In this document: piece after piece, positions 22,286 to 56,450 of the stretch
Position numbering within the stretch: position 1 is the stretch's first letter
How the letters are laid out: each line of letters starts with the position of its first letter
Virus record (IMG/VR): IMGVR_UViG_3300020188_000808
Location: 124,001 to 188,000 of that record
DNA: 64,000 nucleotides
Direction: 5' to 3' (one strand)
The notes under the pieces: generated by a model
Database searches by the model: none
What the model was told of the DNA's origin: nothing
What the model saw: only the letters and a program-made list of their open reading frames with translations
Translations under genes and position numbers: made by a program

Positions 22286-22314
22286 TTGCTCTTTCTCTTT
22301 AAATAGTGTATAAT
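22286..22314 (+). promoter_or_regulatory. Sigma70-like promoter (TTGCTC-N17-TATAAT) with embedded late-like TAAATA
   Basis: -35 at 22286-22291 and -10 at 22309-22314 with 17-nt spacer; AGGAG RBS follows; palindrome TAGTGTA-taa-TACACTA (22304-22320) overlaps the -10. Confidence 0.6.
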
Positions 22315-22333
22315 ACACTAAAGGAGAATTACT

Positions 22334-22687
22334 GTGGATGAACGTCTTGAAAAAGCATTAGATTTTGCCAATTATATGACTACTCTTAACAACCAAAAAC
22401 GGGTGTTAAAAGAGAAGTTTTATGAAAGTGCAATACATTACCACAATGGTGGACAATTCTCCGTAAACAAAGACCTAATGAATTTTTGTAGTATGTTAGT
22501 AAACACAGGACAAGAGTCTGTAGTACTAATTGACGACAATGATATTCCTATTAAAGTTGCAGATGTTGAAACATTCTTAGGTGACATTTTAAATATCTAC
22601 TTTACAGCATCAAACGAGTACCTAACAGAATACGAAAAGATACGGAGCCTTCGAAAGGTCTCTGGGCTTGTAGAATATGAAGAATAA
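22334..22687 (+). CDS. Hypothetical protein (possibly fibre-assembly chaperone-like)
   Basis: GTG start with strong AGGAG RBS; 117 aa, helical; first gene of the island. Confidence 0.5.
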   Translation: MDERLEKALDFANYMTTLNNQKRVLKEKFYESAIHYHNGGQFSVNKDLMNFCSMLVNTGQESVVLIDDNDIPIKVADVETFLGDILNIYFTASNEYLTEYEKIRSLRKVSGLVEYEE

Positions 22688-23525
22688 AGGTGCATTAATA
22701 TTTGCTAGAAATAACGAACAAGTTGATTATCTTAAACAAGCATATTATCTAGCAAAGCGTATAAGCAAATATCTTAATTTACCAACAACTGTTGTAACAG
22801 ATAGTGTTGAATACTTAAAAGATACCTATGTCGATTATGATACAGTATTTGATAATGTAATCGAAGTCCCATATGCTCGCGGCGCCAGCGAAAAACGTTA
22901 CTATGACGGCTCGGGTGTATACAAACAACTATCATTTAAAAATGACTTGCGTACACAAGCCTATAAACTAACACCGTATGACGAAACAATAATGTTAGAC
23001 AGTGATTATATAATTGCAAATGATGTACTCAAACATTGTTTTACACAAGAACACAATTTCTTAATATATAAAGATGCAAAAGACCTAACAGGATTTAGAG
23101 ATACTACCGAGTTTCAAAAAATTAGTGAAACTAGTATTGATTTTTATTGGGCGACAGTTGTATATTTTAAAAAAAGCAAAGAAGTAGAAACATTTTTTAA
23201 TTTAACACAACATATACAAGATAACTGGCAACACTATAACAGTATATTTCAAATTAACAAACCAACGTTTCGTAATGATTGGGTGTTTAGTATTGCAATA
23301 CATATTATGAATGGTTATCAAGCAGGAGATTTTGCAAGTTCATTACCGGGTAAAAAATATTATACAGCAGATAGAGATATTTTGTGGGAATTAAAAGATG
23401 ACAACTTTTTATTTTTAGTAGAAAAAGAAGGACACCTTGGAGAATACACACCTTTGCGTATTAAAGGTAGTAGTGTTCACGTTATGAACAAGTTTAGTTT
23501 GAATAGGATCATAGACAATGACTAA
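22677..23525 (+). CDS. GT-A fold nucleotide-diphospho-sugar transferase
   Basis: 'TPYDETIMLDSD' DxD motif; paralog of the next gene. Confidence 0.7.
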   Translation: MKNKGALIFARNNEQVDYLKQAYYLAKRISKYLNLPTTVVTDSVEYLKDTYVDYDTVFDNVIEVPYARGASEKRYYDGSGVYKQLSFKNDLRTQAYKLTPYDETIMLDSDYIIANDVLKHCFTQEHNFLIYKDAKDLTGFRDTTEFQKISETSIDFYWATVVYFKKSKEVETFFNLTQHIQDNWQHYNSIFQINKPTFRNDWVFSIAIHIMNGYQAGDFASSLPGKKYYTADRDILWELKDDNFLFLVEKEGHLGEYTPLRIKGSSVHVMNKFSLNRIIDND

Positions 23526-24351
23526 AGGTATAGTCTTAATAGCACAAAACAGCGAATATAACTACGTAGAACAAGCGTGTGCGTTAGCTATGAGTATTAG
23601 AGCTACTAATGACACTAAAGTTTGTTTGTTAACCAACGATACAGTACCATCTAGGTATGTAGATCTGTTTGATGTTATTAAAGAAATACCGTGGGAAGAC
23701 GATTCCGCTAATATGGAATGGAAAGTAGCTAATCGTTGGAAGTTATATCATGCTAGTCCGTATGATGAAACTATTGTAATGGATACTGATATGCTTGTAT
23801 TACAAAATTTAGATTCATGGTGGAACTTTTTAAGCAACTATGAAGTGTTTTATACTAGCAAAGTATACACATATAGAGGTGACGAAGTTAACGACACTTA
23901 CTATCGTAAAACATATATTGCAAATAACTTACCAAACGTTTATGCAGGCTTTCATTATTTCAAAAAATGTGACTTTGCAAAAGAATTTTATACAATGTTA
24001 GAATTAGTAATGAACAACTGGCAATTATTTTATGGAAAATATGCAAGTAAAGAATATCAAAATTGGTTAAGCGTTGACACAAGCACAGCAATCGTTACAA
24101 AGATACTTGATTGTGAAGACAGAATTACAAATAAGAAAGTGTCATTTCCTAGTTTTACACATATGAAGCCTAGAATACAAGGATGGTATAATCCTAGTGA
24201 AACATGGCGTAGTAGAGTGGGTGCATATCTAACTGATGACCTACAATTAAAAATAGGCAATCATCAACAGCAAGGTATTTTTCATTATACTGAAAAAGAA
24301 TTTTTAGATCAGTCTAAAATACAAAAATACGAAAGGTATCTTAACGTATGA
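23518..24351 (+). CDS. GT-A fold nucleotide-diphospho-sugar transferase (GT8-like)
   Basis: 'SPYDETIVMDTDML' DxD; 'ALAMSIR' N-terminal helix; C-terminal 'FHY'. Confidence 0.75.
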   Translation: MTKGIVLIAQNSEYNYVEQACALAMSIRATNDTKVCLLTNDTVPSRYVDLFDVIKEIPWEDDSANMEWKVANRWKLYHASPYDETIVMDTDMLVLQNLDSWWNFLSNYEVFYTSKVYTYRGDEVNDTYYRKTYIANNLPNVYAGFHYFKKCDFAKEFYTMLELVMNNWQLFYGKYASKEYQNWLSVDTSTAIVTKILDCEDRITNKKVSFPSFTHMKPRIQGWYNPSETWRSRVGAYLTDDLQLKIGNHQQQGIFHYTEKEFLDQSKIQKYERYLNV

Positions 24352-24935
24352 TATTAACTGCGGAGTTGCCTAAACAAGAAAGATATGTAGTATTTGATCC
24401 TAATAACGGTGATGTGTTAGCAGTACCTAATTATAAACCAGATGGTAATTATATTCCTGTAGAGGAACACGAAGTTAAAGGATTAATTTCGGGACAAGAA
24501 CCGCTAAGTTATTATTATGTACATTACATCAAACATACTAAACAATATGAACTTAGACAGCGTTCAAATACTAGCATTGATAGTTATCTAGTAAATGATT
24601 TAATATACGAATTACCAATGACATCAGTTAATGAGCCAGACATTCATGTATTACAAAATATCAAAGACACATGTTGGAAGATTACTATTGGCGGAGATCT
24701 AAAAGCAAATATTTTAGCACAAAAAGTTAATTTTAAAAATACTATATCGTTTAGTGTTACTGAAAAAGACGATCCAAATATATTACTAAAAACATTAAGT
24801 TTTAGTTTTGCTGATTTATCAGACGTAAAATATGTAATACTTCCATTTGATAGCGATTTTGAATTTAAAGCAAAACCAGTTAGTGTGTATACAATTAAAA
24901 ACTTTGATAGATACTTATACGAGGTAATCAAATGA
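24348..24935 (+). CDS. Hypothetical protein
   Basis: 195-aa ORF translationally coupled (ATGA overlaps) on both sides. Confidence 0.6.
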   Translation: MILTAELPKQERYVVFDPNNGDVLAVPNYKPDGNYIPVEEHEVKGLISGQEPLSYYYVHYIKHTKQYELRQRSNTSIDSYLVNDLIYELPMTSVNEPDIHVLQNIKDTCWKITIGGDLKANILAQKVNFKNTISFSVTEKDDPNILLKTLSFSFADLSDVKYVILPFDSDFEFKAKPVSVYTIKNFDRYLYEVIK

Positions 24936-25816
24936 AAATAAACATTGCAGAGCAAGATATTATCTTTTTAAGTTATGACGAACCTAACTGTGAAAAGAAT
25001 TTTGTTGATTTAGTTAACAAGGTTCCGTGGGCAAAACGTGTACACGGTGTAGAAGGATCAGATGCCGCACACAAAGCCTGTGCTGAATTGAGCGAAACTA
25101 AACACTTTGTTACAGTAGACGGCGATACAATTATTGACCCAGAGTTTTTAAACGTAGTACTAGACTTAGACGAATTAAAAGTTGACGATGATTATCAATT
25201 TAGTTGGTGCGGACATATTAATGTTAACGGACTAAAATATGGTAATGGCAGTTTAAAAATGTGGACTAAAGACTTTGTAAAAAATATGCAAACGCATGAA
25301 AACACAGACGGTGAAGATGATACTAGTATTGAATTTTGTTACTTTGATAATTACTATCAATTAAATGACAACTATAGTACAAGTCTTATAAATGCAACTC
25401 CACATCAAGCCTGGAGAGCAGGGTTCCGTGAAGGAGTTAAGATGAGTTTGAATAGGGGTGCTAAAGTTAAAGACCTTGCAAACGATACTTGGTGGCAAAA
25501 TTATCAACGTTTGTTGATATGGATGCAGGTTGGTGCTGATGTAGACAATGGAATATGGAGTGTAATGGGAGCAAGACAAGGTTGTTACATGACAATGTGT
25601 ACAGATTGGGACTTTGTGCAAACAAGAGATTTTATATATCTTAATAAACTGTGGGAAGAAACAAAAAATAAAGATCCATTAGTATACAGCAAAGAATTAG
25701 GTCAAAGTCTTAGTAGCGAGTGCGGATTACCTATCTCATCTACACCCTTTGACGATGAACAAAGTCATTTTTTCAAACAAGTATACATTAACACGGACAG
25801 AGTTATTCGTAAATGA
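24932..25816 (+). CDS. GT-A fold glycosyltransferase (GT2-like)
   Basis: 'DIIFLSYDE...AHKACA...FVTVDGD' DxD; 'AWRAGFREGVK'; paralog of 32620. Confidence 0.7.
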   Translation: MKINIAEQDIIFLSYDEPNCEKNFVDLVNKVPWAKRVHGVEGSDAAHKACAELSETKHFVTVDGDTIIDPEFLNVVLDLDELKVDDDYQFSWCGHINVNGLKYGNGSLKMWTKDFVKNMQTHENTDGEDDTSIEFCYFDNYYQLNDNYSTSLINATPHQAWRAGFREGVKMSLNRGAKVKDLANDTWWQNYQRLLIWMQVGADVDNGIWSVMGARQGCYMTMCTDWDFVQTRDFIYLNKLWEETKNKDPLVYSKELGQSLSSECGLPISSTPFDDEQSHFFKQVYINTDRVIRK

Positions 25817-27186
25817 GTGAATTAGAAAAAATTAAAACACTAATGCCTAAAATTGAGGATGAAACCTCTCCAACATTCTGTTTAGCAAAATGGCATCACA
25901 CAACTATCTATCTTGCAACAGGAGAAACACATAGTTGTTATCATCCTGCTCCGCATAAAATTCCTTTAGAAGAATTAGAAGGCAATCCTAGTGCGTTACA
26001 TAATACTATTGAGAAAAAAGAACAGCGTAAACAAATGCTATGCGGAGATAAACCAGACGGTTGTAGTTACTGTTGGAAAATTGAAGCAATGGGTAAAGAC
26101 TTTGTAAGTGATAGACATATTAAAACTGCAAGTATATACACACCTGAAAGAGTAGCGGAAATAAAACAAAAAGGGGCGGATTTTAACGTAAATCCTGAGT
26201 ATATTGAAATTAGTTTTAGTAATGAATGCAATTTTAAGTGTGGATACTGTCACCCTAAAGCCTCTAGTAGGTATTGGAACGAAATAAAACAACATGGACC
26301 ATACGATATGTCAAGCACACATAGACAAGACATTGATTGGTTTGAAGTACAAAAAGACGAAGACACGAATCCATACGTAAAAGCGTTTTGGGAATGGTGG
26401 CCTGAACTTAGTAAGACACTAAACATTTTGCGTATTACAGGCGGCGAACCATTGATGCATAAAAGTTTTTGGAAACTGTTAGAAAAGTTAGATAACGATC
26501 CTAAGCCACACATACAAATTGAAGTAAACAGTAACATGGGTGTTAAGCCTAAGCTAGTTGAAAGACTAACTGAAACAGTTAAGCGTTTAAAAGCAGAAGG
26601 CAAGATTAAAAGTTTTAAATTGTACACTAGTATTGATACTTGGGGACCAAGAGCAGAATATGCACGTACCGGGTTAGACATTAAGTTATGGGAACAAAAC
26701 TTAGATTATTATCTAAGCAATACAAACTGGCCTGTAACATTTATGATTACGTTTAATATATTTGGTGTAACTAGTTTTACGCAACTATTAGAAAAAATAC
26801 TAGAGTGGCGTACAAAATACAATAGTGATGACAATGCTACTCAGTGGCAACGTATTAGATTTGATACACCTCATTTAAAAGAACCAAGCATATATGACAT
26901 GAACATTTTACCTAAAGAAGAATTTATGCCGTATATGGAAAAACACTTACAATTTATTAAAGATAACCAAGACGATACTAATCGTACTAAGTTTACAGGG
27001 TTAGAATACGAAAAGTTTAAACGTGTAGTAGAGTATATGCGTACAACACATTATGAACCACGTAAGCTAGAACAAGCACGTAGAGATTTTCATAACTGGT
27101 TCAAAGAATTTGATCGTAGACGTAACTGTAATTTGGTAGAAACTTTTCCAGAACTAGAAGGCTTTTATAATGACTGCGGAAAGTAA
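25813..27186 (+). CDS. Radical SAM protein with N-terminal twitch/SPASM-like domain
   Basis: CNFKCGYC (CX3CX2C) and ITGGEP; N-terminal C..W...SCYH...CSYCW Cys cluster. Confidence 0.9.
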   Translation: MSELEKIKTLMPKIEDETSPTFCLAKWHHTTIYLATGETHSCYHPAPHKIPLEELEGNPSALHNTIEKKEQRKQMLCGDKPDGCSYCWKIEAMGKDFVSDRHIKTASIYTPERVAEIKQKGADFNVNPEYIEISFSNECNFKCGYCHPKASSRYWNEIKQHGPYDMSSTHRQDIDWFEVQKDEDTNPYVKAFWEWWPELSKTLNILRITGGEPLMHKSFWKLLEKLDNDPKPHIQIEVNSNMGVKPKLVERLTETVKRLKAEGKIKSFKLYTSIDTWGPRAEYARTGLDIKLWEQNLDYYLSNTNWPVTFMITFNIFGVTSFTQLLEKILEWRTKYNSDDNATQWQRIRFDTPHLKEPSIYDMNILPKEEFMPYMEKHLQFIKDNQDDTNRTKFTGLEYEKFKRVVEYMRTTHYEPRKLEQARRDFHNWFKEFDRRRNCNLVETFPELEGFYNDCGK

Positions 27187-28363
27187 TACATTTTGCATAC
27201 TTCCGTGGATTCATTTCTATGCTAATCCAGACGGCAATGTACTTCCTTGTTGTATAGGTGATTGGCGTCAACCTCTTGGCAACACACGTAAAAACACTAT
27301 TAAAGAAATATGGAATAGTGAAGAATATAAAAAATTAAGACTTGCATTATTAAACAATGAAAAGCCTAGTGCTTGTACACAATGTTGGAAACACGAAGAA
27401 GCAGGAATAGAAAGCAATAGAATTGCACAAAATAATAGATTTGCACAGCATATTAGTATAAAAGACGAAACCAATTTTGACGGTTCGTTAGATATAATGA
27501 AGTTACTATACTTTGATGTACGTTGGAGCAACATTTGTAATTTTAAATGCAGAACCTGTAGTAGTACTTACAGTTCTACATGGGCTGTAGAAGATAACAA
27601 GCAAGGTGAAAATAAACCTGTATACATTTTTGCAGGCGGAGATAACAACGATAATTTGTTTGAACAGTTTAAGCCGTACCTTAAAGGTATTCAAGATTAT
27701 TATTTTGCAGGTGGCGAGCCTCTTATTACAGATAAGCATTATGATATTTTAGATTATTTAATTGAAAATAAAAAGACTGATGCTGTACTGCAATACAACA
27801 GTAATTTAAGTAATTTATTTTTTAAGAAGAAAAGTATTACAGAGTATTGGAATAATTTTAAACACGTTGAAGTACGTGCAAGTATTGACGGCTATGGAAA
27901 CAGAGGCGAGTATATTAGAGAAGGTACTGATTGGCCAACTATAGAACAAAACTTAAAAATTATTAAAAAAGAAAGTCCGCATGTAATTATTAGTTTTAAT
28001 TGTGTAGTAAGTGCATTTAATGTATTAACACTTGTAGACTTTTTAGAATATATGTCTAGCAAAGGATTTGATGTAAACAACAGTACGCTTTATAATATTG
28101 TTGAACCTAATTACTACAGTTTTAATGCACTAACAGATGAACAAAGACAAACTGCAATAGATAAGTTACAAGCATACGCAAATACAGTAACACATACAGA
28201 ACATTTAAGATATGTAAATGGTGTTATTGATTACTTGCACAAGTCAACATTTGATCAAAGTGCAAATGATTTGTTTAAATCTAACAATATGTACTTTGAT
28301 AAAATTCGTAATCGTTCTTTTAACGAAACGTTTCCTGAACTTATTGATGTATTAACGGATTAA
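27170..28363 (+). CDS. Radical SAM protein with N-terminal twitch/SPASM-like domain
   Basis: CNFKCRTC, FAGGEP, SIDG; N-terminal CILPW..DGNVLPCC...CTQC. Confidence 0.9.
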   Translation: MTAESNTFCILPWIHFYANPDGNVLPCCIGDWRQPLGNTRKNTIKEIWNSEEYKKLRLALLNNEKPSACTQCWKHEEAGIESNRIAQNNRFAQHISIKDETNFDGSLDIMKLLYFDVRWSNICNFKCRTCSSTYSSTWAVEDNKQGENKPVYIFAGGDNNDNLFEQFKPYLKGIQDYYFAGGEPLITDKHYDILDYLIENKKTDAVLQYNSNLSNLFFKKKSITEYWNNFKHVEVRASIDGYGNRGEYIREGTDWPTIEQNLKIIKKESPHVIISFNCVVSAFNVLTLVDFLEYMSSKGFDVNNSTLYNIVEPNYYSFNALTDEQRQTAIDKLQAYANTVTHTEHLRYVNGVIDYLHKSTFDQSANDLFKSNNMYFDKIRNRSFNETFPELIDVLTD

Positions 28364-30471: not shown

Positions 30472-30485
30472 AAGGGTAACTTTCC

Positions 30486-30506
30486 ATAAATACTACTGTA
30501 TTTATA
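30486..30506. promoter_or_regulatory. Bidirectional late promoter pair (ATAAATA on +, TATAAATA on -) forming an inverted repeat
   Basis: ATAAATAC-TACT-GTATTTAT in the only gap between divergent operons; the minus-strand copy is the exact T4 late consensus. Confidence 0.65.
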
Positions 30507-30532
30507 TGCGTATATAATGATTGGAGAACATA

Positions 30533-47343: not shown

Positions 47344-47382
47344 AAGTATATTTAACAGATAGTTTAATGATATAGTAGAGTT

Positions 47383-48081: not shown

Positions 48082-48082
48082 C

Positions 48083-50199: not shown

Positions 50200-50608
50200 T
50201 AAGAAAGACTTTGTATCTAAAATGCAAAGTGAAAATATCACAGATGTAACAGTTGAAGATACTAATGATTATTATATTTGCATTGATTCAACAGGTGGTC
50301 CAAACAGTGAGCCTTATTTTAAACAATTTCATCCCAATGTATTAAATTTATGTTTTGATGATGTTGCTGAAGATCAAACAAATTGGGGAGAAGATATACA
50401 ATCATATTACAAAGCAGTTGCACCAACCCTAACACAAATTCAACACATTTCAAATTTCCTTAAAGATGCTTGTGGAACAATTCATGTTCATTGTATGAAA
50501 GGCGAATCACGTAGCAAAGCAGTTGCAGATTATGTAAATAATACTAGAATTAAACATAATGGAAAGTATGCATATACAATTATAAGGAATACACTAGATG
50601 AGCTTTGA
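50180..50608 (+). CDS. Cys-dependent (PTP/dual-specificity-like) phosphatase
   Basis: HCMKGESRS = HCxxGxxRS P-loop; 'FDD' general-acid loop. Confidence 0.75.
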   Translation: MIAVSYSKKDFVSKMQSENITDVTVEDTNDYYICIDSTGGPNSEPYFKQFHPNVLNLCFDDVAEDQTNWGEDIQSYYKAVAPTLTQIQHISNFLKDACGTIHVHCMKGESRSKAVADYVNNTRIKHNGKYAYTIIRNTLDEL

Positions 50609-51149
50609 TGTAAAAGAATTACCTATAGGGATCGAATATAGTGACTTTAGAAGTTACTACATAGGATTACAAACAAACTTTGAACATTTAAAATTTACTA
50701 ATGTAGCTGATACTGTTAATAGTGAAAAACATAAAACTGATGGTGTATACGGTTGGGGTATACAAAGTAATTTAGACGACTTAACAATACCTTGTCCACC
50801 TTGGAATGTACACAAGGAAGGTAGCGATGATTATAGAGATACTGAATTAGTATACGGTGTAATTAATAGACTTAAAGTAAAATTTCCTCAAGCAAGACAG
50901 TTTAGTATTAGCGGCCATCCACCCGGAACTGAAATAGCACAGCACACCGACACTGATAGATATCTTAAAATACATATTCCTATACTAAGTAACCCTGATG
51001 CATGTTTTGTATTTGGTGATAAAAAATATTCGTTAGTTATTGGAAAAGCATATCTAATAAATACTAGACGCCCACACGGTACTATTAATAACGGAGAAAC
51101 AGATAGAGTACATTTATTTTTTAAAGTACCTGCTGAACATTACATATGA
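50598..51149 (+). CDS. Asp/Asn beta-hydroxylase-like 2OG-Fe(II) oxygenase
   Basis: PGTEIAQHTD, KIHIPI, PHGTIN, DRVHL. Confidence 0.85.
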   Translation: MSFDVKELPIGIEYSDFRSYYIGLQTNFEHLKFTNVADTVNSEKHKTDGVYGWGIQSNLDDLTIPCPPWNVHKEGSDDYRDTELVYGVINRLKVKFPQARQFSISGHPPGTEIAQHTDTDRYLKIHIPILSNPDACFVFGDKKYSLVIGKAYLINTRRPHGTINNGETDRVHLFFKVPAEHYI

Positions 51150-51874
51150 GATTATTAACTGCTAAAGATATAACAGATGTTGATGCATTATTTAATAGTC
51201 TCGAATGGGATATAATTGAATTAGACTTTAGCATTAATAAAGATGATTTAGAATTCTATTATACACAATTAAAAACACGATTACAAAATTTATGCTTTAG
51301 TTTTAATTCTAAAGAATATCTACGTCCTGAAATATATGATAGATTTCAAAAAGAAAATGCAGTTGGAAATTATCAAGGAAACGTACAAGGTTGGAGTGTT
51401 AGTTGGCCAATAGAGCGAGATATTCCATGTCCAAGTAAATCACAAGCTAACATTGATATGTATCCTGAATTACAAAATTTAGATGAAGAAAAATTCTATT
51501 ATGATTGTGTACCAATGCAAGTTTATAAATTTGGTATCTTAAACAAAATGTTAGAAACACTATCTTTGCAATCATTAAGACAGATGTTAATAGCATTACA
51601 CCCTAGTGGACTTAAAGTTAATACACATACTGACGGAAAAACTAGAAAACTACATGTTCCATTTTATACAAATAAAGATGCTGTTTTTACTTTTGGCGAA
51701 AACAGAGAACGAACATATCACATGGAATTGGGCAAAGGATATATAATTAATACCCTAGTTCCACATGGTACAGAAAATAACGGAAGTACAGAGCGAGTAC
51801 ACTTATTGTCCAGAGTTGATGACGATTTTATGCAATCGCTTTTATTAATAAACTGCAATATAGCAGATAAATAA
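51146..51874 (+). CDS. Asp/Asn beta-hydroxylase-like 2OG-Fe(II) oxygenase
   Basis: VNTHTD, KLHVPF, PHGTEN, ERVHL. Confidence 0.85.
   Translation: MRLLTAKDITDVDALFNSLEWDIIELDFSINKDDLEFYYTQLKTRLQNLCFSFNSKEYLRPEIYDRFQKENAVGNYQGNVQGWSVSWPIERDIPCPSKSQANIDMYPELQNLDEEKFYYDCVPMQVYKFGILNKMLETLSLQSLRQMLIALHPSGLKVNTHTDGKTRKLHVPFYTNKDAVFTFGENRERTYHMELGKGYIINTLVPHGTENNGSTERVHLLSRVDDDFMQSLLLINCNIADK
51867..51873 (+). promoter_or_regulatory. T4-late-like promoter ATAAATA
   Basis: GATAAATA followed by AGGAG RBS and ATG at 51893; same layout as at 19868. Confidence 0.55.
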
Positions 51875-51892
51875 CAGTAACAGGAGATAATA

Positions 51893-53140
51893 ATGAGCAA
51901 CACATATTTTACACAGGTATTAGACGAACCATACCACTTAGGAAATGGTGAATTTTTGTCAGTAATCACTAACGGAAAAGCACGTCACGAAGGCGAAGAA
52001 ACAAGAGATTTTAACAAAGATGCAGGTGCAAGAGCAGGATTGCTTAGAGTAAATGCAGATAGTACTACATTTGTAGACTTTTTTGATAAAAGTGATAACG
52101 GTGACAGATACCGAGGTATTGCAGTTGTAGGTAATACAGCATATGTAATGCGTACACAAAAAGACAAAGTAGACAGCATTATTAGAGTAGCGGCTGTAAA
52201 CTTAGATACTAATGAAGTTACAATGATTGAAGAAAAAGGTGTTACAGTACACGGCTCAGAAACTCCTAAAACATTCTGTGGACACTTTAACTTTGGTCGC
52301 CCAATTACAGTTGGTACTAAAATTGTTTATCCACCAATTATGAGTGGAATGATTATTGTGTTTGATACTGTTGCTAATACATTTACTGTACACGAAACAG
52401 AAGAAAAGTTTGCTTCTATTCATAGTGTGTACGTAGAAGATTTAAATGAAGTTGTATTTTTTCCATATGGTAAAACAACTAACAAGTTGTTAACATTAGA
52501 CATGGAAACAAATACAATTACTGCACATGAAGCTCCAACTAACGGTGCATTTTATCATGTTAATACAAACGGAACTAAAGCAGTTGGTGCTCCATTAATT
52601 ATGGACGGTACTACAGAATTTAACTTCTGGGTATATGACGGTGATACAGTTCAATCAGTTGCTTATGATTCATCTAGCACAGATGACATGGGTGGACAAA
52701 TGGGTTTCAAATACGGAACTATGAACGGTAACACATTATTAACACATACTTGTTGGGAAGGCTGTAAAGAGTTTGTATCATTAAACTTAGATACACTTGC
52801 TATTGATAGCTTTGCAACTAATGAGTCACTAGGTAGTAAACCAGTTATTAATGCTGGAGACGTTTACTTGTTTCCATCAATACAAAATCCAAGCATGGTA
52901 AATCCAACAACTAAAGTTTTTAAAGTTGAAGGAACTGCAATTAACGAAGTTATGGACTTAGGTACTGCAAATATTACTTCAGGATCAATTAATGATACTG
53001 ATAGTGTTACAATGTTGGCACCTTACAAGTTTGATTTTAGTGATGCAGGGTTAGGTAGTGATATGGCTATTGTAGATCTTAATTCTAAAACATCAAAACT
53101 TATTCCAGTTAATTTAAGCCTAGAAACTTATTCTAGTTAA
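51893..53140 (+). CDS. Beta-propeller repeat protein, possibly virion-associated
   Basis: Repeats IVYPPIM..IIVFDT, VVFFPYG..LLTLD, AVGAPL, VYLFPS; T/N/G-rich like the structural genes; own promoter and RBS. Confidence 0.55.
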   Translation: MSNTYFTQVLDEPYHLGNGEFLSVITNGKARHEGEETRDFNKDAGARAGLLRVNADSTTFVDFFDKSDNGDRYRGIAVVGNTAYVMRTQKDKVDSIIRVAAVNLDTNEVTMIEEKGVTVHGSETPKTFCGHFNFGRPITVGTKIVYPPIMSGMIIVFDTVANTFTVHETEEKFASIHSVYVEDLNEVVFFPYGKTTNKLLTLDMETNTITAHEAPTNGAFYHVNTNGTKAVGAPLIMDGTTEFNFWVYDGDTVQSVAYDSSSTDDMGGQMGFKYGTMNGNTLLTHTCWEGCKEFVSLNLDTLAIDSFATNESLGSKPVINAGDVYLFPSIQNPSMVNPTTKVFKVEGTAINEVMDLGTANITSGSINDTDSVTMLAPYKFDFSDAGLGSDMAIVDLNSKTSKLIPVNLSLETYSS

Positions 53141-53145
53141 TTGTT

Positions 53146-53862
53146 ATGGAGCGTTTTAACGATACGCCCTGCCAAGACGCCACAGGAAAAATGTTCGCTG
53201 ACTATCACGAATATGTAGACTACGATAAAAAGAATAATCCAGATAGATGCCATTTTAAAAACGCTCAAGGCAGAGAAACCTTTGCTCCTAGTTTTAATCG
53301 TGTAAGTGAAATATATCCATACCATGATCTAGGATTTCAAATGCATAAATGGTTTGAGTTTGATCTAGAGAAAGCCCGTGATTGGTATAAACAATTTTTA
53401 GAAAAATATTCAGATACTGAATTTCTCTACCAAGGAGAAACTACAGAACCTAACAGTTGGGGTTGTGTATATGGACAAGGGTGTGGGTTATATAGTATTA
53501 AAGAAGAACAGTTATTTGGTTATTTGTTAGATATACACAATGCACTAATTGATATGGGATTAGATAAAGATGCATTTGAATGGGTAGTAGTAAAACATAC
53601 ACCAGGAACACGCTTAGGTATGCATCAAGATGAGCCACAATGGCTTACAGTACATTTACCTTTATACACTAATGATAAAACCAATTGGACAATAGGCGGA
53701 ACTCCGTTCTTAATGCCAACTGACGGGTGTTATATTATTAATAGTACACAACCTCATGATGTTGTAAATTATGGCGACACAGATAGAATACATATCTATT
53801 TCAGTATAAAAACTTCACAGGTTGAAAAAGTCTGGGAAAAGCCAAATATAAAAGGAAGTTAG
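53146..53862 (+). CDS. Asp/Asn beta-hydroxylase-like 2OG-Fe(II) oxygenase
   Basis: PGTRLGMHQD, TVHLPL, PHDVVN, DRIHI. Confidence 0.85.
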   Translation: MERFNDTPCQDATGKMFADYHEYVDYDKKNNPDRCHFKNAQGRETFAPSFNRVSEIYPYHDLGFQMHKWFEFDLEKARDWYKQFLEKYSDTEFLYQGETTEPNSWGCVYGQGCGLYSIKEEQLFGYLLDIHNALIDMGLDKDAFEWVVVKHTPGTRLGMHQDEPQWLTVHLPLYTNDKTNWTIGGTPFLMPTDGCYIINSTQPHDVVNYGDTDRIHIYFSIKTSQVEKVWEKPNIKGS

Positions 53863-53870
53863 ACACTAGT

Positions 53871-54194
53871 ATGAAAGAAGTTACAGATACAAACTTTAAC
53901 GAGTACTTAGATACTACACGTGGTCGGTGTGTGATGTTGTTCTATGCTAACTGGAACGGCCCTAGCAGTCAGTTTCAAACTAACTTTGCACAACTAGAAT
54001 CTAGCTATAGTGAAGTTAACTTTGCACAATCAGAAGTAGATCCTAATCCCTCTACATACAACAGATTCACAGTACACGGGGTTCCCTGCGTTAAAGTATT
54101 TGAACACACTGATTCAAGTACAACTGTATTAGGAACATTATATGGTGACAGTTCAAAAGAACAAATCAAACAATTTATTGATAAACATGTCTAA
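53871..54194 (+). CDS. Thioredoxin-fold protein lacking CxxC (WNGPS)
   Basis: 'EVTDTNF...FYANWNGPS...VHGVP' follows the thioredoxin pattern, but both active-site Cys are replaced. Confidence 0.7.
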   Translation: MKEVTDTNFNEYLDTTRGRCVMLFYANWNGPSSQFQTNFAQLESSYSEVNFAQSEVDPNPSTYNRFTVHGVPCVKVFEHTDSSTTVLGTLYGDSSKEQIKQFIDKHV

Positions 54195-55302
54195 ACAAAA
54201 AATTGTTATAGTAGGCGGTGGTACATCTGGATGGATGACTGCCGCTTATCTTTCTAAAAAAACCGATTGGGACATTACACTTATTCAAAGTCAAGATATC
54301 CCTATCATTGGAGTAGGCGAAAGCACACTTCCAAGTATATACGATTTTATTCAAGAGTGTGGATTAACTGAACAAGATCTGTTTGATGATTGTGATGCTG
54401 TACGCAAGTATACAATTAAACACAAAAATTGGCACGGTGATAGTTGGTATCATCATTTTTGTTTTAATGAATCAGAACATGACGAACAAATGCGTTGGAT
54501 GATAAATTATGAAATGCCAGATAAAAAATGGCGCCACGCATATCATATTGATGCTAACAAGTTTGGAATAATGCTTAGAGATAAAGTAGCATTACCTAAT
54601 GGCGTTAAACTAATAAACAAAACATTAGACACTATAGATGATATTGACGCAGATTTAATTATTAATTGTGCAGGATTTAATAAACTATTTCCTGAAACTA
54701 ATATGATTAAATCTAGTCTTAAAAATAACTGTGCAGTAGTAGCACCTAGTTATGATACTGAACTAAAGTATTATACAGAAACTACTGCTATGAGTGCAGG
54801 ATGGATGTGGAATATCTATTTACAAAATAGAATAGGTAATGGATATGTATTTAATAAAGACTACCAAACAATAGAAGATGCAAAACAAGAGTTCATAGAT
54901 ACTTGTCCGTATAAACTAGAATTAGATAAGTTAAGAGTAATTGAGTGGACAGGACAATATAGTGATACTCCTTATCAAGGTAATATTCTAAATGTAGGTT
55001 TAAGTGCAGGATTTTTAGAACCATTAGAAGCACAAGCAATATGGTTAATACAATACCAAGTAGAAATGCTAGTAAGACTTTATAACAAGCAAAAAATCTA
55101 TAACGCACAATGGAGAAAGGTTGTAACGCATATTGAAAAGTTTTTAGAACTTCACTATACTGCAACTAGTAAAAATACTCCATATTGGAAAAACGAAGTT
55201 AAAGAAATTAAGATTAAAAAGACACCGTTTGCTATTTTTGATGAGTACAGTTATCGTTGCCTAGCGAAAGGTTACGCTCTTCCATATACTTTAGAACATT
55301 AA
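54187..55302 (+). CDS. Tryptophan halogenase-family flavin-dependent enzyme (short)
   Basis: GGGTSGW, GVGEST, Lys in 'AVRKYTI', WMWNIYL (WxWxI), GFLEPLE; start at ATG 54187 (track 54142). Confidence 0.8.
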   Translation: MSKQKIVIVGGGTSGWMTAAYLSKKTDWDITLIQSQDIPIIGVGESTLPSIYDFIQECGLTEQDLFDDCDAVRKYTIKHKNWHGDSWYHHFCFNESEHDEQMRWMINYEMPDKKWRHAYHIDANKFGIMLRDKVALPNGVKLINKTLDTIDDIDADLIINCAGFNKLFPETNMIKSSLKNNCAVVAPSYDTELKYYTETTAMSAGWMWNIYLQNRIGNGYVFNKDYQTIEDAKQEFIDTCPYKLELDKLRVIEWTGQYSDTPYQGNILNVGLSAGFLEPLEAQAIWLIQYQVEMLVRLYNKQKIYNAQWRKVVTHIEKFLELHYTATSKNTPYWKNEVKEIKIKKTPFAIFDEYSYRCLAKGYALPYTLEH

Positions 55303-55792
55303 TACGCCACAGACGCTGTGGAACATTAAACAACATCATACTTTGTTCTAACTTCCATATACCACGTCTTGCTAATAATGGCATCATAGTATCATTCATA
55401 CGTTTACTTTTACCACCATCATCATTTATGTTTGTACTAATATAAAGTTCTGCATTGAGACTTTGTTCTAATGCCCAATTGATTTGCAAATTTAATAACT
55501 GACTTAGTTGTATTCCAGTCTTAAAAATATCTCTACCAGTGCCTAATGTATAACCAGGTAATTGGGCACCACGGAATAAACATCTATATGCATCTGGACT
55601 AACTTCGGGTAGTTTATGTATGCCAGCAATACTAACAATTTTATCTTTGTGTGTAGCAACAGTCCAAGCACCTTCTTCTAGTACCCATTCCCATTTCATT
55701 TTTTTAAGAGATGTGTTATTGCTGAAGTTTTGTGATTTGCAAAATTTCTCTACTAACGATTCATCGTCTTTAGTAGCAAACCTAAAATTCAT
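55232..55792 (-). CDS. GNAT-fold acyltransferase-like protein
   Basis: 'FRFATKDD...IVSIAGI...RCLFRGAQLPGY' GNAT-like pattern; coupled to the upstream adenylation gene. Confidence 0.45.
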   Translation of the reverse strand: MNFRFATKDDESLVEKFCKSQNFSNNTSLKKMKWEWVLEEGAWTVATHKDKIVSIAGIHKLPEVSPDAYRCLFRGAQLPGYTLGTGRDIFKTGIQLSQLLNLQINWALEQSLNAELYISTNINDDGGKSKRMNDTMMPLLARRGIWKLEQSMMLFNVPQRLWRINVLKYMEERNLSLGNDNCTHQK

Positions 55793-56450
55793 TTTTCCAA
55801 GTTTTACCATTAGCTATATTCATCCTGTGTGAAAATGTTTTAGTATTCATGTCAAATATATCGCCTGTACTTTTACCATTAATAATACAATGGGCTAACT
55901 TAGATGTAGCAGTAATTGGATTAAACATCACATGTGTTCTTTTTTCATCTATAGTGTTAAAATCAAAACTAGGTGAATCGTATCCAATCATTACCGGCGG
56001 AGCATACTCTGTCATGCCGTACCAATTAGCAACAGTCTGTACTCCACGCTCTTTGAATGCATCAATAAATGATTGCTCAATTTTACTACTACCAGTAACC
56101 ATATAACGTACACAACTCATGTCTAAGTCTTTAAAGCCTTTTGTCTTTTGTAACAACTCTAAATGGCGTGGAATTAACGCTATATACGTCGGTTTAACGC
56201 TACTAAACAACGTAGGGTAGGTAAGTGCATTAAAGTTAGCACTAACTAGCTGTGCGCCGCTTATATAAGCAGGAAGAGCTGTTATAGTATAGTGTGCTAT
56301 AGTGTTTGCTGGAAAGACATCCAATACAATATCGTCTTTAGTTAGTCCAATTTCTTTTGCTGAAAGTTTTGCAGATTGGTTAATATATTCCCAAGAGTGT
56401 GTTACACGTTTTGGTTCATCTGTACTACCTGATGTGAATAGAGTAAGCAT
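55782..56450 (-). CDS. Minimal AMP-binding (ANL adenylation) enzyme
   Basis: A3 P-loop FTSGSTDEPK, A5 YGMTE, A7 TGD; only 222 aa. Confidence 0.75.
   Translation of the reverse strand: MLTLFTSGSTDEPKRVTHSWEYINQSAKLSAKEIGLTKDDIVLDVFPANTIAHYTITALPAYISGAQLVSANFNALTYPTLFSSVKPTYIALIPRHLELLQKTKGFKDLDMSCVRYMVTGSSKIEQSFIDAFKERGVQTVANWYGMTEYAPPVMIGYDSPSFDFNTIDEKRTHVMFNPITATSKLAHCIINGKSTGDIFDMNTKTFSHRMNIANGKTWKNEF

What the first reader, a model, noticed from the sequence alone, without database searches (positions are those of the whole stretch)
22334..56450. ~34-kb phage 'tailoring factory': ~41 genes of radical-SAM, oxygenase and glyco-enzymes between tail-fibre genes (candidate virion-decoration system)
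Seen: a nearly gap-free, translationally coupled island with 9 radical SAM enzymes, 7 2OG-Fe(II) oxygenases, 4-5 glycosyltransferases, a nucleotide-sugar dehydrogenase, 2 SGNH proteins, an SDR, methyltransferase-like proteins, a kinase, a phosphatase, a halogenase, an adenylation enzyme, a GNAT and 3 beta-propellers. Fibre genes flank it on both sides, it contains a fibre-like fragment, and it carries the same ATAAATA promoters as the structural genes. It has no scaffold synthase (NRPS/PKS), carrier protein, transporter or precursor peptide, so the substrate is probably a pre-existing macromolecule. Established: individual 2OG oxygenases, halogenases and GTs occur in marine T4-like phage islands, but I know no described pathway with this composition and scale. 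Inference: a late pathway that builds unusual modified sugars and/or residues and installs them on virion proteins (a phage 'glycocalyx' for host range, stability or evasion). Alternative: remodelling of the host surface for superinfection exclusion.
Basis: partly seen in the sequence, partly recalled or inferred. Interest (0 to 1): 0.92.

Follow-up and report, generated by a model that had tools for sequence, protein, structure and literature searches.

The report
Jumbo-phage glycan-tailoring island beside fibres
An uncultured salt-marsh jumbo phage carries 41 tightly packed enzyme genes between its tail-fibre genes that most likely make and attach unusual modified sugars, probably to its own fibres, but the target is unproven and similar islands in marine phages have already been described.

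Summary
The observation largely holds. Window 22334-56450 has 41 ORFs, is 99.8% coding, and 31 of 35 same-strand junctions overlap or abut. It holds 9 radical SAM enzymes (5 in NCBIfam NF033640, with an N-terminal twitch domain), 6 clear and 1 probable PF05118 2OG hydroxylases, a UDP-glucose/GDP-mannose dehydrogenase, a halogenase and 6 candidate GT-A glycosyltransferases, two verified by fold. SGNH, SDR, methyltransferase, kinase and phosphatase calls have only weak support. GNAT, the fibre-like fragment and the third propeller are unverified.

New findings:
- More than 110 aquatic viral contigs and the cultured Ralstonia phage RsoM2USA keep a six-gene core (g22334 to g25813) directly after the fibre genes. 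The rest varies by cassette.
- The glycosyltransferase-methyltransferase g48083 is fused to g47383-type hydroxylases in relatives, and the two are predicted to bind. This is the hydroxylate-then-glycosylate logic of collagen modification.
- There are two promoter classes. A conserved ATAAATA motif precedes fibre genes and some island units, while the core is preceded by a near-consensus sigma-70 promoter in relatives. So "late" holds only in part.

Best reading is a cytoplasmic glycan and protein tailoring system acting on virion fibres (about 0.4). The main rival is host envelope remodelling. Pelagimyophage host recognition clusters are a published analogue. Novelty: new variant of a known kind.

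The parts
570..15383 (+). giant 4937-aa virion-type protein (FG-GAP, CBM5/12 traces); candidate acceptor
   Evidence: Pfam; partial homology to RsoM2USA ORF361, an MS-identified virion protein
15405..22282 (+). five fibre/baseplate-type genes (15405, 16023 Collar+gp10_C, 18053, 19894, 21389); 16023/18053/19894 share an N-terminal region
   Evidence: order conserved in all relatives
15380..15386 (+). ATAAATA promoter-like motif before g15405
   Evidence: conserved in 23/23 relatives
19868..19874 (+). ATAAATA motif before fibre gene g19894
   Evidence: conserved in 43/43 relatives
22283..22333 (+). intergenic region with TATAAT -10 element (TTAAATAGTGTATAAT); near-consensus sigma-70 promoter in relatives
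   Evidence: at least 11/12 consensus matches in 29/50 relatives
22334..22687 (+). core gene 1, 117 aa, unknown function (possible fibre chaperone, untested)
   Evidence: no Pfam hit; conserved in all relatives and RsoM2USA ORF354 at 35%
22677..24351 (+). core genes 2-3: paralogous GT8/Mannosyl_trans3-like GT-A candidates (DSD / DTD motifs)
   Evidence: RsoM2USA ORF353/352 at 35%
24348..24935 (+). core gene 4, 195 aa, unknown function
   Evidence: no family hit; conserved position
24932..25816 (+). core gene 5: GT-A glycosyltransferase fold plus helical C-domain (DGD motif)
   Evidence: AF2 pLDDT 85; Foldseek SunS/ThuS, BcsA, WrtF; VIA Z 10.2 B4GALNT1
25813..28363 (+). two N-terminal-twitch radical SAM enzymes (g25813 is core gene 6; g27170)
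   Evidence: NF033640, 329 and 387 bits
28341..29207 (-). SGNH-like protein (GCSF block I)
   Evidence: motif; Lipase_GDSL hits in orthologs at 0.016
29188..30471 (-). weak GT10 (fucosyltransferase)-like candidate
   Evidence: atlas score 0.78 with 10/10 named hits GT10; NETF...FWSEKTFRS motif
30486..30505 (.). divergent pair of ATAAATA motifs between g29188 and g30521
   Evidence: present before g29188 orthologs in 10/10 relatives
30521..31705 (+). UDP-glucose/GDP-mannose dehydrogenase family
   Evidence: Pfam E 5e-18 and 1.6e-17
31702..32619 (+). SGNH-like protein (GDSNALG)
   Evidence: motif
32620..33294 (+). GT-A paralog of g24932
   Evidence: BLAST 1.6e-16; RsoM2USA ORF348 at 45%
33272..34231 (+). 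short radical SAM (paralog of g39974), preceded by ATAAATA at 33241
   Evidence: Pfam 1.1e-12
34228..34542 (+). 104-aa membrane protein, the only clear TM product
34539..35150 (+). methyltransferase-like protein
   Evidence: motif; weak ortholog hits; RsoM2USA ORF347 at 32%
35143..37435 (+). radical SAM with C-terminal SPASM (35143) and N-twitch radical SAM (36110)
   Evidence: 418 bits
   Evidence: no hits; absent in several relatives
38690..39977 (+). PF05118 hydroxylase g38690 and probable seventh 2OG enzyme g39321
39974..41454 (+). short radical SAM g39974 and SDR-like g40906
   Evidence: a g39974-type radical SAM is fused to a g48083 homolog in P0138
41435..47448 (-). minus-strand block: N-twitch rSAM 41435, two Kelch-like propellers 42531/43654, kinase-like 44861, N-twitch rSAM 45303, rSAM-SPASM 46366
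47383..48081 (+). 2OG-Fe(II) hydroxylase with intact H143-x-D145...H193 and R203; partner of g48083
   Evidence: fused in relatives; predicted complex
48083..49552 (+). bifunctional GT-A glycosyltransferase (about residues 15-270) plus class I methyltransferase fold (about 271-480)
   Evidence: AF2 pLDDT 89; COLGALT1 Z 9.6, PBCV-1 A64R 9.2, mimivirus R699 9.0, methyltransferases about 7
49552..55302 (+). variable right block: hydroxylases 49552, 50598, 51146, 53146; HCX5R phosphatase 50180; propeller-like 51893 (ATAAATA at 51867); Cys-less thioredoxin fold 53871; halogenase 54142
   Evidence: whole block absent in L144-147, L153, L156
   Evidence: right boundary in most relatives with coverage

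Best explanation
The island is a phage-encoded, cytoplasmic system that builds and tailors glycans and modifies proteins, and it belongs to the fibre/baseplate module.

Shown by computation:
- 41 contiguous genes for soluble enzymes.
- A six-gene core (unknown 117-aa protein, two GT8-like GT-A candidates, an unknown 195-aa protein, a fold-verified GT-A, and an N-twitch radical SAM) that always follows the fibre genes. The rest is exchanged by cassettes.
- A 2OG hydroxylase (g47383) that pairs with a glycosyltransferase-methyltransferase (g48083).

Inferred mechanism:
- Host nucleotide sugars are oxidised by the g30521 dehydrogenase.
- They are further tailored by SDR-like, methyltransferase-like, SGNH acyl-transfer, and kinase/phosphatase enzymes. 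Relatives add PMM, KdsA-like, DegT and B12-radical-SAM enzymes.
- The seven PF05118 hydroxylases create hydroxyl groups on acceptor residues.
- GT-A enzymes then glycosylate those positions. The g47383-g48083 pair would work as a coupled hydroxylase/glycosyltransferase/O-methyltransferase, as LH3, COLGALT1 and mimivirus L230/R699 do on collagen.
- The nine radical SAM enzymes add C-H chemistry (epimerisation, oxidation, C-methylation or cross-links) to sugars or to the acceptor.
- The most likely acceptors are the phage's own fibre and giant baseplate-associated proteins, modified in the cytoplasm before or during assembly. Cassette turnover would then diversify the virion surface.
For: Gene families. 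GT-A folds of g24932 and g48083. GT8/Mannosyl_trans3 leads for g22677 and g23518.

Synteny: the order g15405-g16023-g18053-g19894-g21389-g22334-g22677-g23518-g24348-g24932-g25813 is kept in all relatives with enough flank, down to about 50% identity. RsoM2USA keeps it too, next to its baseplate wedge and MS-confirmed virion protein ORF361. The right edge is the fibre gene g56495 in most relatives.

The ATAAATA motif is shared and conserved between fibre genes and island units. The adenylation fragment and g55232 lie in the same unit as fibre gene g56495.

No membrane or export machinery is present. This fits cytoplasmic protein modification better than Gtr/Oac-type surface conversion.

Hydroxylase-glycosyltransferase coupling: 8 of 10 long g48083 homologs carry a g47383-type hydroxylase domain, at either end, and one carries a g39974-type radical SAM. 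The predicted complex scores ipSAE 0.68 against a best control of 0.00; that mark was reached by 58/80 solved complexes and 2/110 mismatched pairs. The 2-His-1-carboxylate triad is invariant. The best structural neighbours of g48083 act on proteins or capsids: COLGALT1, R699, A64R (PMC9546862, PMC12279948).

Relatives add sugar enzymes. In bacteria, N_Twi_rSAM genes often sit beside GT2, GT1, GT9, DegT, PMT_2 and ABC2 genes.

The region appears as patchy contigs in DNase-treated marsh metatranscriptomes.
Against: No result shows a glycan or hydroxylation on any virion protein. The acceptor is inferred from linkage and analogy.

The conserved core operon has a near-consensus sigma-70 promoter in 29 of 50 relatives and lacks ATAAATA. 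That suggests early or host-RNAP expression rather than co-expression with fibres.

Fold matches are middling (Z 9-10, Foldseek E about 1e-3 to 1e-4), and the GT-A fold does not specify an acceptor. GT8 enzymes are typically LPS-core transferases that need no TM segment. The authors of the pelagimyophage study read analogous islands as host O-chain modification.

Some cellular N_Twi_rSAM contexts point to exported glycans or lipids: ABC2 and PMT_2, and ACP/KS in Paenibacillus.

No collagen-like or other repeat acceptor motif was found in the fibres.

About 10 ORFs remain unassigned. The island may not be one pathway.
Confidence: 0.4

Rival explanations
1. Host envelope remodelling. The enzymes modify host LPS core or O-units, or capsule precursors, at the cytoplasmic face of the membrane during infection. 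This would block superinfection by competing phages or change cell-surface properties. It is the interpretation published for pelagimyophage host recognition clusters.
For: GT8-like transferases and a UDP-sugar dehydrogenase are classic LPS and capsule enzymes. PMC7029224 argues this for analogous islands. The sigma-70-type promoter before the core operon in most relatives fits early expression. Relatives carry KdsA-like and PMM genes. Bacterial N_Twi_rSAM neighbours include ABC2 exporters, PMT_2, GT9 heptosyltransferase and GT1.
Against: No flippase, polymerase, Und-P transferase, or Gtr/Oac-type membrane enzyme is present; there is only one small TM protein. Several sub-operons share the fibre-gene ATAAATA motif. 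The core is glued to fibre genes across more than 100 contigs and in RsoM2USA. The hydroxylase-glycosyltransferase fusion logic and structural neighbours point to protein acceptors.
Confidence: 0.25
2. There is no single pathway. The region is a hypervariable dumping ground next to fibre genes that collects independent cassettes (auxiliary metabolic genes, stress or redox enzymes, halogenase). Only the six-gene core has one function.
For: Cassette gain and loss among relatives: g27170, g34228, g37435-38690, g40906 and the whole 49552-55782 block. At least two promoter classes and five strand switches are present. The halogenase is exchanged for distant paralogs, 26-82% identity. Several ORFs are unassigned.
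Against: Paralogous expansion of the same few families (5+2+2 radical SAM, 7 hydroxylases, 6 GT-A) is present rather than a random mix. Domain fusions link hydroxylase, glycosyltransferase-methyltransferase and radical SAM families that lie in different parts of the island. Packing is very tight, with overlapping stops and starts.
Confidence: 0.15
3. Biosynthesis of a diffusible small molecule or modified peptide (RiPP-like or aminoglycoside-like). SPASM/twitch radical SAM maturases, hydroxylases, a halogenase and an adenylation fragment would be used during infection.
For: SPASM/twitch radical SAM enzymes are typical peptide maturases or aminoglycoside tailoring enzymes, with partial NCBIfam hits to sactipeptide, ranthipeptide and mycofactocin maturases. 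A halogenase and an AMP-binding fragment are present. The Paenibacillus homolog lies in an ACP/KS/GT2/ABC cluster.
Against: 99.8% coding density leaves no room for a separate precursor gene. No RiPP recognition element, leader peptidase, exporter, NRPS/PKS or carrier protein is present. None of the equivalog models reaches its cut-off. The linkage to fibre genes would be unexplained.
Confidence: 0.1
4. DNA hypermodification: glycosylation or hydroxylation of phage DNA bases to evade restriction.
For: Phage glycosyltransferases and 2OG oxygenases can act on DNA (general knowledge; cited in PMC12619734). A kinase-like and a phosphatase-like protein are present.
Against: There is no dNMP hydroxymethylase or thymidylate-synthase homolog, no dNMP kinase family hit and no DNA-binding domain. 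The island lies inside the fibre module. The hydroxylases are of the PF05118 type, not TET/JBP or AlkB type.
Confidence: 0.03

Closest known systems
Host recognition cluster (HRC) of pelagimyophages and cyanomyophages (Zaragoza-Solas et al. 2020, PMC7029224)
   Same: A large (34-45 kb) hypervariable island inside the structural region, among tail-fibre genes and next to a giant structural gene. It contains GT8-type glycosyltransferases, UDP-glucose dehydrogenase and radical SAM cassettes that come and go between close relatives. Asp/Asn beta-hydroxylases are common in those phages. Its function is untested.
   Different: The phage lineage differs: this is a jumbo phage whose AAA ATPase is 51% identical to PA5oct and whose core is shared with RsoM2USA, not a T4-like phage. 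The genes are not detectably homologous to those of GenBank pelagi- or cyanophages. This island has a strictly conserved six-gene core, far more radical SAM and 2OG paralogs, and a hydroxylase-glycosyltransferase pairing not reported there.
Collagen-type hydroxylation-glycosylation enzymes: human LH3 and COLGALT1, mimivirus L230 and R699
   Same: A 2OG-Fe(II) hydroxylase is coupled, by fusion or complex, to a GT-A glycosyltransferase. g48083's best structural matches are COLGALT1/2 and R699. Fusions with g47383-type hydroxylases occur in relatives, and a complex is predicted.
   Different: The hydroxylase is PF05118 (Asp/Asn-hydroxylase/LpxO type), not a lysyl hydroxylase. No collagen-like Gly-X-Y repeats occur in the phage fibres. 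g48083 carries an extra methyltransferase domain. Fold similarity is moderate (Z 9-9.6) and sequence identity about 10%.
Virus-encoded virion glycosylation: chlorovirus PBCV-1 A064R (capsid glycan; glycosyltransferase plus methyltransferase domains), Megavirinae fibril glycosylation clusters, mycobacteriophage capsid and tail glycosylation (Freeman et al. 2023, cited in PMC12619734)
   Same: Virus-encoded cytoplasmic glycosyltransferases, sugar-tailoring enzymes and methyltransferases that decorate the virus's own structural proteins. Gene content varies by clade. The A64R glycosyltransferase domain is a top structural match of g48083, Z 9.2.
   Different: In those systems glycans on virions were demonstrated; here nothing is measured. 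None of them, to my knowledge, contains arrays of radical SAM enzymes or seven 2OG hydroxylases.
NCBIfam NF033640, N_Twi_rSAM (twitch domain-containing radical SAM protein)
   Same: Five island proteins are full-length members above cut-off, with four N-terminal Cys plus CX3CX2C. As in Bdellovibrionota genomes, they occur as several paralogs in one locus.
   Different: The family has no characterised member that I could find, so membership gives no reaction or substrate.
Phage serotype-conversion systems (GtrABC, Oac)
   Same: Phage-encoded glycan modification with possible roles in superinfection exclusion.
   Different: Those are 1-3 integral-membrane proteins of temperate phages acting on O-antigen at the periplasmic face. 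This island encodes about 40 soluble enzymes in a virulent-type jumbo phage.

Membership tests
Radical SAM superfamily (PF04055) | CX3CX2C cluster motif and match to the core domain | tested here: met
   Nine ORFs hit PF04055: seven clear the 29.5-bit cut-off, g35143 scores 28.6 and g27170 21.8 bits. g27170 is secured by NF033640 at 387 bits. C123/C127/C130 are invariant in the N-twitch alignment.
NF033640 N_Twi_rSAM | Whole-protein score above the curated cut-off (170 bits), with the N-terminal twitch/SPASM-like Cys cluster preceding the radical SAM core | tested here: met
   g25813 329, g27170 387, g36110 418, g41435 223, g45303 228 bits. Pfam places SPASM at residues 3-93, before the core. 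C9, C69 and C72 are invariant and C27 nearly so.
RiPP maturase system (radical SAM/SPASM peptide maturases) | Adjacent precursor peptide gene and a match to a maturase equivalog | tested here: not met
   All equivalog hits are far below cut-off. At 99.8% coding density there is no free small ORF.
PF05118 Asp/Asn beta-hydroxylase-type 2OG-Fe(II) oxygenases | Pfam score above gathering cut-off; 2-His-1-carboxylate triad and a 2OG-binding Arg | tested here: met
   Six ORFs score 29-48 bits against a cut-off of 22.6. H143, D145, H193 and R203 are invariant in the g47383 family. g39321 is linked only by weak BLAST and motif.
GT-A glycosyltransferases | Rossmann-like GT-A fold with a DxD metal/nucleotide-sugar motif | tested here: met
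   g24932: model pLDDT 85, all top matches GT-A, Z up to 10.2, DGD motif. g48083: pLDDT 89, Z 9.6. A nucleotidyltransferase function with the same fold is not excluded.
CAZy GT8 (g22677, g23518) | Significant match to the GT8 / nucleotide-diphospho-sugar transferase profile | tested here: inconclusive
   The window proteins have no Pfam hit. Atlas neighbours carry PF01501 or PF11051 at score 0.96. Two divergent orthologs hit PF11051 at 4.6e-6. A profile search against PDB sequences was empty.
CAZy GT10 fucosyltransferase (g29188) | Match to PF00852 and its conserved C-terminal motif | tested here: inconclusive
   Atlas score is only 0.78 (lead level), although 10/10 named hits are GT10. A similar motif was seen by eye. 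No Pfam or PDB hit.
UDP-glucose/GDP-mannose dehydrogenase | N-terminal NAD-binding domain, central domain and C-terminal domain; catalytic Cys | tested here: met
   N-terminal and central domains are above cut-off; the C-terminal domain scores 21.9, below its cut-off of 30. The GGACHPRD motif is present.
Flavin-dependent (Trp-type) halogenase | PF04820 match, GxGxxG FAD motif, WxWxIP motif, catalytic Lys | tested here: inconclusive
   PF04820 E 2.6e-72 and GGGTSG present. The second motif reads WMWNIY (P replaced by Y). The catalytic Lys was not mapped. The protein is short at 386 aa.
Host recognition cluster (HRC) of T4-like marine myophages | Hypervariable island within the structural module, flanked by or containing fibre genes, with glycosyltransferase, LPS-type and radical SAM cassettes; located between VrlC and gp14 of a T4-like genome | tested here: inconclusive
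   Position among fibre genes, cassette variability and gene classes are met. The VrlC/gp14 landmarks and T4-like backbone were not established, the lineage appears different, and no gene homology to GenBank pelagi- or cyanophages was found.
Virion glycosylation system | Glycans covalently attached to virion proteins and dependent on the phage enzymes | not testable with these tools
   Needs glycostaining and MS of virions. RsoM2USA virion proteomics exists, but only bands were identified; modifications were not examined.
Gtr/Oac serotype-conversion | Integral membrane GtrA/GtrB/GtrC or an acyltransferase-3 protein | tested here: not met
   No such Pfam hits, and only one small TM protein.

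The most novel reading that the evidence does not exclude
A widespread lineage of aquatic jumbo phages, with the cultured soil phage RsoM2USA carrying only the minimal glycosyltransferase/radical SAM core, matures its receptor-binding fibres with its own enzymes: 2OG hydroxylation of side chains coupled to O-glycosylation and O-methylation (collagen-like logic), plus radical SAM, halogenase and acyl tailoring. Cassette exchange of these enzymes, rather than only fibre sequence change, would then diversify the virion surface and host range. This would be the first multi-enzyme post-translational 'tailoring line' for bacteriophage virion proteins. It would also give the uncharacterised N-twitch radical SAM family its first function.
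Probability: 0.3. Interest if true: 0.85.

Novelty: new variant of a known kind. Interest (0 to 1): 0.62.

Why it matters
Fibre-adjacent hypervariable islands are a general but unexplained feature of abundant marine phages. The published guess is host O-antigen modification, and it has never been tested. This analysis adds four handles on the problem:

- **A defined core.** A minimal conserved six-gene core is now delimited.
- **A testable enzyme pair.** The hydroxylase and the glycosyltransferase-methyltransferase form a concrete pair with a biochemical hypothesis that can be assayed.
- **A promoter map.** It splits the island into at least two expression classes.
- **A cultured model.** Ralstonia phage RsoM2USA carries the core, so the question "virion or host surface?" becomes directly testable.

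If virions are the target, phage host range and stability in the sea would depend on enzymatic decoration as well as on fibre sequence. A large uncharacterised radical SAM family would also gain a function: more than 6,000 of the 8,000 candidates scored matched at E<=1e-10.

Tried and rejected
- Megablast of 21.7 kb against 50,697 GenBank phage records found no match.
- tblastn of island proteins found only RsoM2USA, plus weak Vibrio jumbo-phage radical SAM hits.
- Pfam on the 22 unassigned ORFs up to E=1 gave only weak hints.
- Profile searches of ortholog alignments for g22677, g24932 and g29188 against PDB sequences gave nothing useful.
- Single-sequence PDB searches for g37435, g55232 and g51893 were empty.
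- T4 late promoter TATAAATA is rejected as the motif. It occurs once against 14 expected. The real motif is ATAAATA.
- A generic sigma-70/terminator scan of the island showed no enrichment: 102 promoter-like sites against 96 expected, and 7 terminators against 7.7. The sigma-70 signal appeared only through comparison of relatives.
- Genomic context of fusion proteins P0233 and P0148 came from contigs too short to help.
- Cellular contexts of N_Twi_rSAM are heterogeneous. The Flavobacteriales short form lies among heme genes, so guilt by association is only suggestive.
- The metatranscriptome runs are kept as contigs, so neither timing nor transcript ends could be read. The two 2018 runs give flat long contigs that may be DNA carry-over.
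- I considered frameshifted radical SAM genes as an explanation for the N-terminal SPASM domains. This is rejected because the architecture is a curated family, full length in five paralogs.
- A collagen-like acceptor is rejected. There are no Gly-X-Y runs in the giant protein, and only one four-triplet run in g16023.
- No tRNA or Rfam element lies in the window.

Full report
**1. What is there**

Window 22334-56450 contains 41 ORFs of 104-489 aa (31 on +, 10 on -). They cover 99.8% of the bases, and 31 of 35 same-strand junctions overlap or abut. G+C is 32-36%, like the flanks. There are no tRNAs or Rfam elements. By 100% identity of several proteins, the window corresponds to about 124001-188000 of the 267,783-bp viral contig IMGVR_UViG_3300020188_000808. 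The backbone is a jumbo phage. The AAA ATPase g60917 is 51% identical to that of PA5oct, 42% to Phosso and 38% to Atu_ph07.

**2.

- **Confirmed by Pfam and NCBIfam.**
  - Nine radical SAM proteins. Five are full-length members of NF033640 (twitch domain at the N-terminus), two carry a C-terminal SPASM domain and two are short.
  - Six PF05118 hydroxylases plus a probable seventh, g39321.
  - A UDP-glucose/GDP-mannose dehydrogenase, a Trp-halogenase-family flavoprotein, a thioredoxin fold, and a 222-aa fragment of an adenylation domain.
- **Glycosyltransferases.**
  - None passes Pfam directly, but I count six candidates.
  - g24932 was modelled (pLDDT 85), and every top PDB match is a GT-A transferase: B4GALNT1 Z 10.2, WrtF, ThuS/SunS, SpsA. 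g32620 is its paralog.
  - g48083 (pLDDT 89) is a GT-A domain followed by a class I methyltransferase fold.
  - g22677 and g23518 are paralogs with DxD motifs. Their atlas neighbours carry GT8 or Mannosyl_trans3, and divergent orthologs hit PF11051 at 4.6e-6.
  - g29188 is only weakly GT10-like.
- **Weak support only.** SGNH (g28341, g31702), SDR (g40906), methyltransferase (g34539, g38010), APH/choline-type kinase (g44861) and HCX5R phosphatase (g50180) rest on motifs and on weak hits in orthologs.
- **Not verified.** The GNAT (g55232), the 'fibre-like fragment' (g37435) and the third propeller (g51893).
- **Absent.** There is no NRPS/PKS, carrier protein, transporter, flippase or polymerase. 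g34228 is the only clearly membrane-spanning product.

**3. Flanks**

Upstream lie a 4937-aa protein with traces of FG-GAP and CBM5/12 domains and five fibre/baseplate-type genes. Three of these share an N-terminal region, and one carries Collar and gp10_C domains. Downstream, on the minus strand, is an Mtd_N fibre-type gene, g56495.

**4. Comparative genomics**

- Three scans of IMG/VR returned about 150 related loci at 44-100% protein identity, from marine, estuarine, marsh and freshwater samples.
- In every locus with enough flank, the order g15405-g16023-g18053-g19894-g21389-g22334-g22677-g23518-g24348-g24932-g25813 is kept, down to about 50% identity. The first six island genes are therefore a conserved core welded to the fibre genes.
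- Downstream content changes by cassette. g27170, g34228, g37435-g38690 and g40906 come and go. The whole block 49552-55782 (four hydroxylases, phosphatase, propeller, thioredoxin fold, halogenase, g55232, adenylation fragment) is missing in one subgroup, where g48083 lies next to the fibre gene, directly or after a short unmatched stretch.
- Relatives add a KdsA-like synthase, a phosphomannomutase, a second sugar dehydrogenase, a B12-radical SAM and a DegT fragment.
- Several of these contigs are deposited inside cellular MAGs (Euryarchaeota, Rickettsiales, Legionellales, Haliscomenobacter) but carry the phage fibre genes. They are most likely mis-binned.
- Among 50,697 GenBank phage records, only Ralstonia jumbo phage RsoM2USA shares the module. 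ORF354-347 correspond in order to g22334, g22677, g23518, an unmatched ORF, g24932, g25813, g32620 and g34539, at 32-45% identity. They sit next to fibre-like ORF355, the MS-identified giant virion protein ORF361 and the baseplate wedge ORF362. All are annotated as hypothetical.

**5. Promoters**

- The T4 late consensus TATAAATA is almost absent: 1 found against 14 expected.
- ATAAATA is depleted overall (12 found, 43.5 expected). Yet 8 of the 12 copies lie 19-29 nt upstream of start codons, binomial P about 9e-12. These are g15405, g19894, g29188, g30521, g33272, g51893, g56495 and g62520.
- The motif is conserved at those positions in relatives and absent before other genes: g15405 23/23, g19894 43/43, g29188 10/10, g51893 4/4, g56495 5/5. 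Fibre genes and several island units therefore share one promoter class.
- The core operon does not share it. Its leader has a TATAAT box in the window. In 29 of 50 distinct relatives it has TTGACA-N16-18-TATAAT with at least 11 of 12 matches, a signal found before essentially no other gene. By analogy with T4-type phages this is an early, host-RNAP promoter. That reading is an inference.
- Salt-marsh metatranscriptomes contain the region. The DNase-treated runs give patchy contigs, with more depth on the fibre genes (about 10-13) than on the GT8-like genes (0-5). These are assembler depths of contigs, and they give no timing.

**6. A functional link inside the island**

- g48083 belongs to a family with 502 representatives at 50% clustering.
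- Of ten long members, eight carry a hydroxylase domain at either end. That domain is 28-45% identical to g47383, the gene immediately upstream of g48083. One further member carries a radical SAM domain closest to g39974.
- The g47383 family keeps the His-x-Asp...His triad and the 2OG-binding Arg.
- Co-folding g48083 with g47383 gave ipSAE 0.68 (median of three runs) against 0.00 for the best of three controls. That mark was reached by 58 of 80 solved complexes and 2 of 110 mismatched pairs. My own alignments were used, so these counts hold only roughly.
- The best structural neighbours of the g48083 glycosyltransferase domain are:
  - human collagen hydroxylysine galactosyltransferase COLGALT1, Z 9.6;
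  - the PBCV-1 A64R capsid-glycan transferase, Z 9.2;
  - mimivirus R699, a collagen glucosyltransferase, Z 9.0 (PMC9546862, PMC12279948).
  These scores are moderate, and the fold alone does not define the acceptor.
- Even so, a hydroxylase physically coupled to a glycosyltransferase is the signature of hydroxylate-then-glycosylate protein modification.

**7. The radical SAM family**

NF033640 is very abundant in aquatic metagenomes: 6,201 of the 8,000 candidates scored match at E<=1e-10. I found no characterised member. In cellular genomes it is frequent in Bdellovibrionota, often as tandem arrays of 2-5 copies. Its neighbours there include GT1, GT2, GT9, DegT, PMT_2 and ABC2 exporters. They also include an ACP/ketosynthase cluster in Paenibacillus and heme genes in Flavobacteriales. 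This leans toward glycoconjugate chemistry but is not decisive.

**8. Interpretation**

The island is a sugar and redox tailoring system, not a scaffold-building one. I favour protein acceptors made in the cytoplasm, meaning the phage's own fibres and giant baseplate-associated protein (confidence about 0.4), for four reasons:
- the core is fixed to the fibre genes;
- the fibre-gene promoter motif recurs inside the island;
- all enzymes are soluble, with no lipid-carrier or export steps;
- the hydroxylase and glycosyltransferase are coupled.

The main rival is remodelling of host LPS or capsule precursors (about 0.25). It is supported by the GT8 and dehydrogenase content, by the early-type promoter of the core, and by the published reading of analogous islands. 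Other options are:
- a mosaic of unrelated cassettes (about 0.15);
- a diffusible peptide or small molecule (about 0.1);
- DNA modification (about 0.03).

**9. Comparison with what is known**

- The closest described phenomenon is the 'host recognition cluster' of pelagimyophages and cyanomyophages. It is a 34-45 kb hypervariable island among fibre genes, with GT8 transferases, UDP-glucose dehydrogenase and radical SAM cassettes. Its authors interpret it as host O-chain modification, and it has never been tested (PMC7029224).
- The present island is analogous in position and gene classes. It differs in lying in a different phage lineage, in lacking detectable homology to GenBank pelagi- and cyanophage genes, in being much richer in radical SAM and 2OG paralogs, and in having a strictly conserved core.
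- Virion glycosylation by virus-encoded enzymes is established in chloroviruses, Megavirinae and mycobacteriophages (cited in PMC12619734). It provides the mechanistic precedent.
- I therefore rate this a new variant of a known kind. The system remains unexplained, widespread, and now experimentally approachable through RsoM2USA.

Noticed in passing
window 22283-22333; orthologous leaders in L085, L086, L091, L095, L106, L111, L113 and others: The leader of the conserved core operon carries a near-perfect sigma-70 promoter (TTGACA-N17-TATAAT) in 29 of 50 distinct relatives. Almost no other gene start in the region does. g59545 in the window shares the TTAAATAGTGTATA leader variant with g22334.
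   Followed up: partly
whole window: TATAAATA occurs once (14 expected) and ATAAATA 12 times (43.5 expected). The motif seems purged from non-promoter positions, as expected for a strong phage promoter element.
   Followed up: yes
L038 (PAHU01000005.1, 'Euryarchaeota' MAG), L223/L228 ('Rickettsiales' MED657), L162 ('Legionellales' SP228), L183/L188 (Haliscomenobacter EUL_031): Contigs deposited in cellular MAGs carry the same fibre-plus-glycosyltransferase-core synteny. They are probably jumbo-phage contigs that were mis-binned.
   Followed up: partly
L158, L167, L175, L186, L198 and other Bdellovibrionota/Bacteriovoracaceae loci: N-twitch radical SAM genes (NF033640) occur as tandem arrays of 2-5 paralogs in predatory bacteria, mirroring the multiplicity in the phage. 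A shorter form in Flavobacteriales lies among heme-biosynthesis genes (URO-D, ALAD, HemL-type, ChaN).
   Followed up: partly
window 53871-54194: The thioredoxin-fold protein reads WNGPS where thioredoxins have WCGPC. It has no redox cysteines and is probably not a disulfide reductase.
   Followed up: no
window 55782-56450 (-): A 222-aa protein matches only positions 168-331 of the 384-position AMP-binding profile, starting at the TSGST(D/G)xPK motif. It is conserved at this length in relatives (66-83% identity). It lies directly downstream of fibre gene g56495 in the same ATAAATA-led unit, so it is a conserved mini-protein, not a pseudogene.
   Followed up: partly
window 47383-47448: The listed TTG start of g46366 (-) overlaps the start of g47383 (+) by 66 nt. 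The radical SAM domain begins only at residue 51, so the true start is probably further in, which would leave a short divergent control region.
   Followed up: no
window 54142-55302 and relatives L126-L157: The halogenase position is occupied by proteins only 26-82% identical among otherwise close relatives. This suggests replacement by distant paralogs. The second halogenase motif reads WMWNIY rather than WxWxIP.
   Followed up: no
window 59545-62068 (-): A DUF2201 metallopeptidase/VWA-like protein lies next to a MoxR-type AAA ATPase. The pair is conserved at 74-89% in relatives and belongs to the backbone, not the island.
   Followed up: no
window 19850-25849 in RNA runs X8 and X10: In DNase-treated marsh metatranscriptomes one contig ends at 22279, the end of fibre gene g21389, and depth drops about three-fold over the GT8-like genes before rising again at g24932/g25813. 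This is compatible with separate transcription units but is based on assembler depths only.
   Followed up: partly
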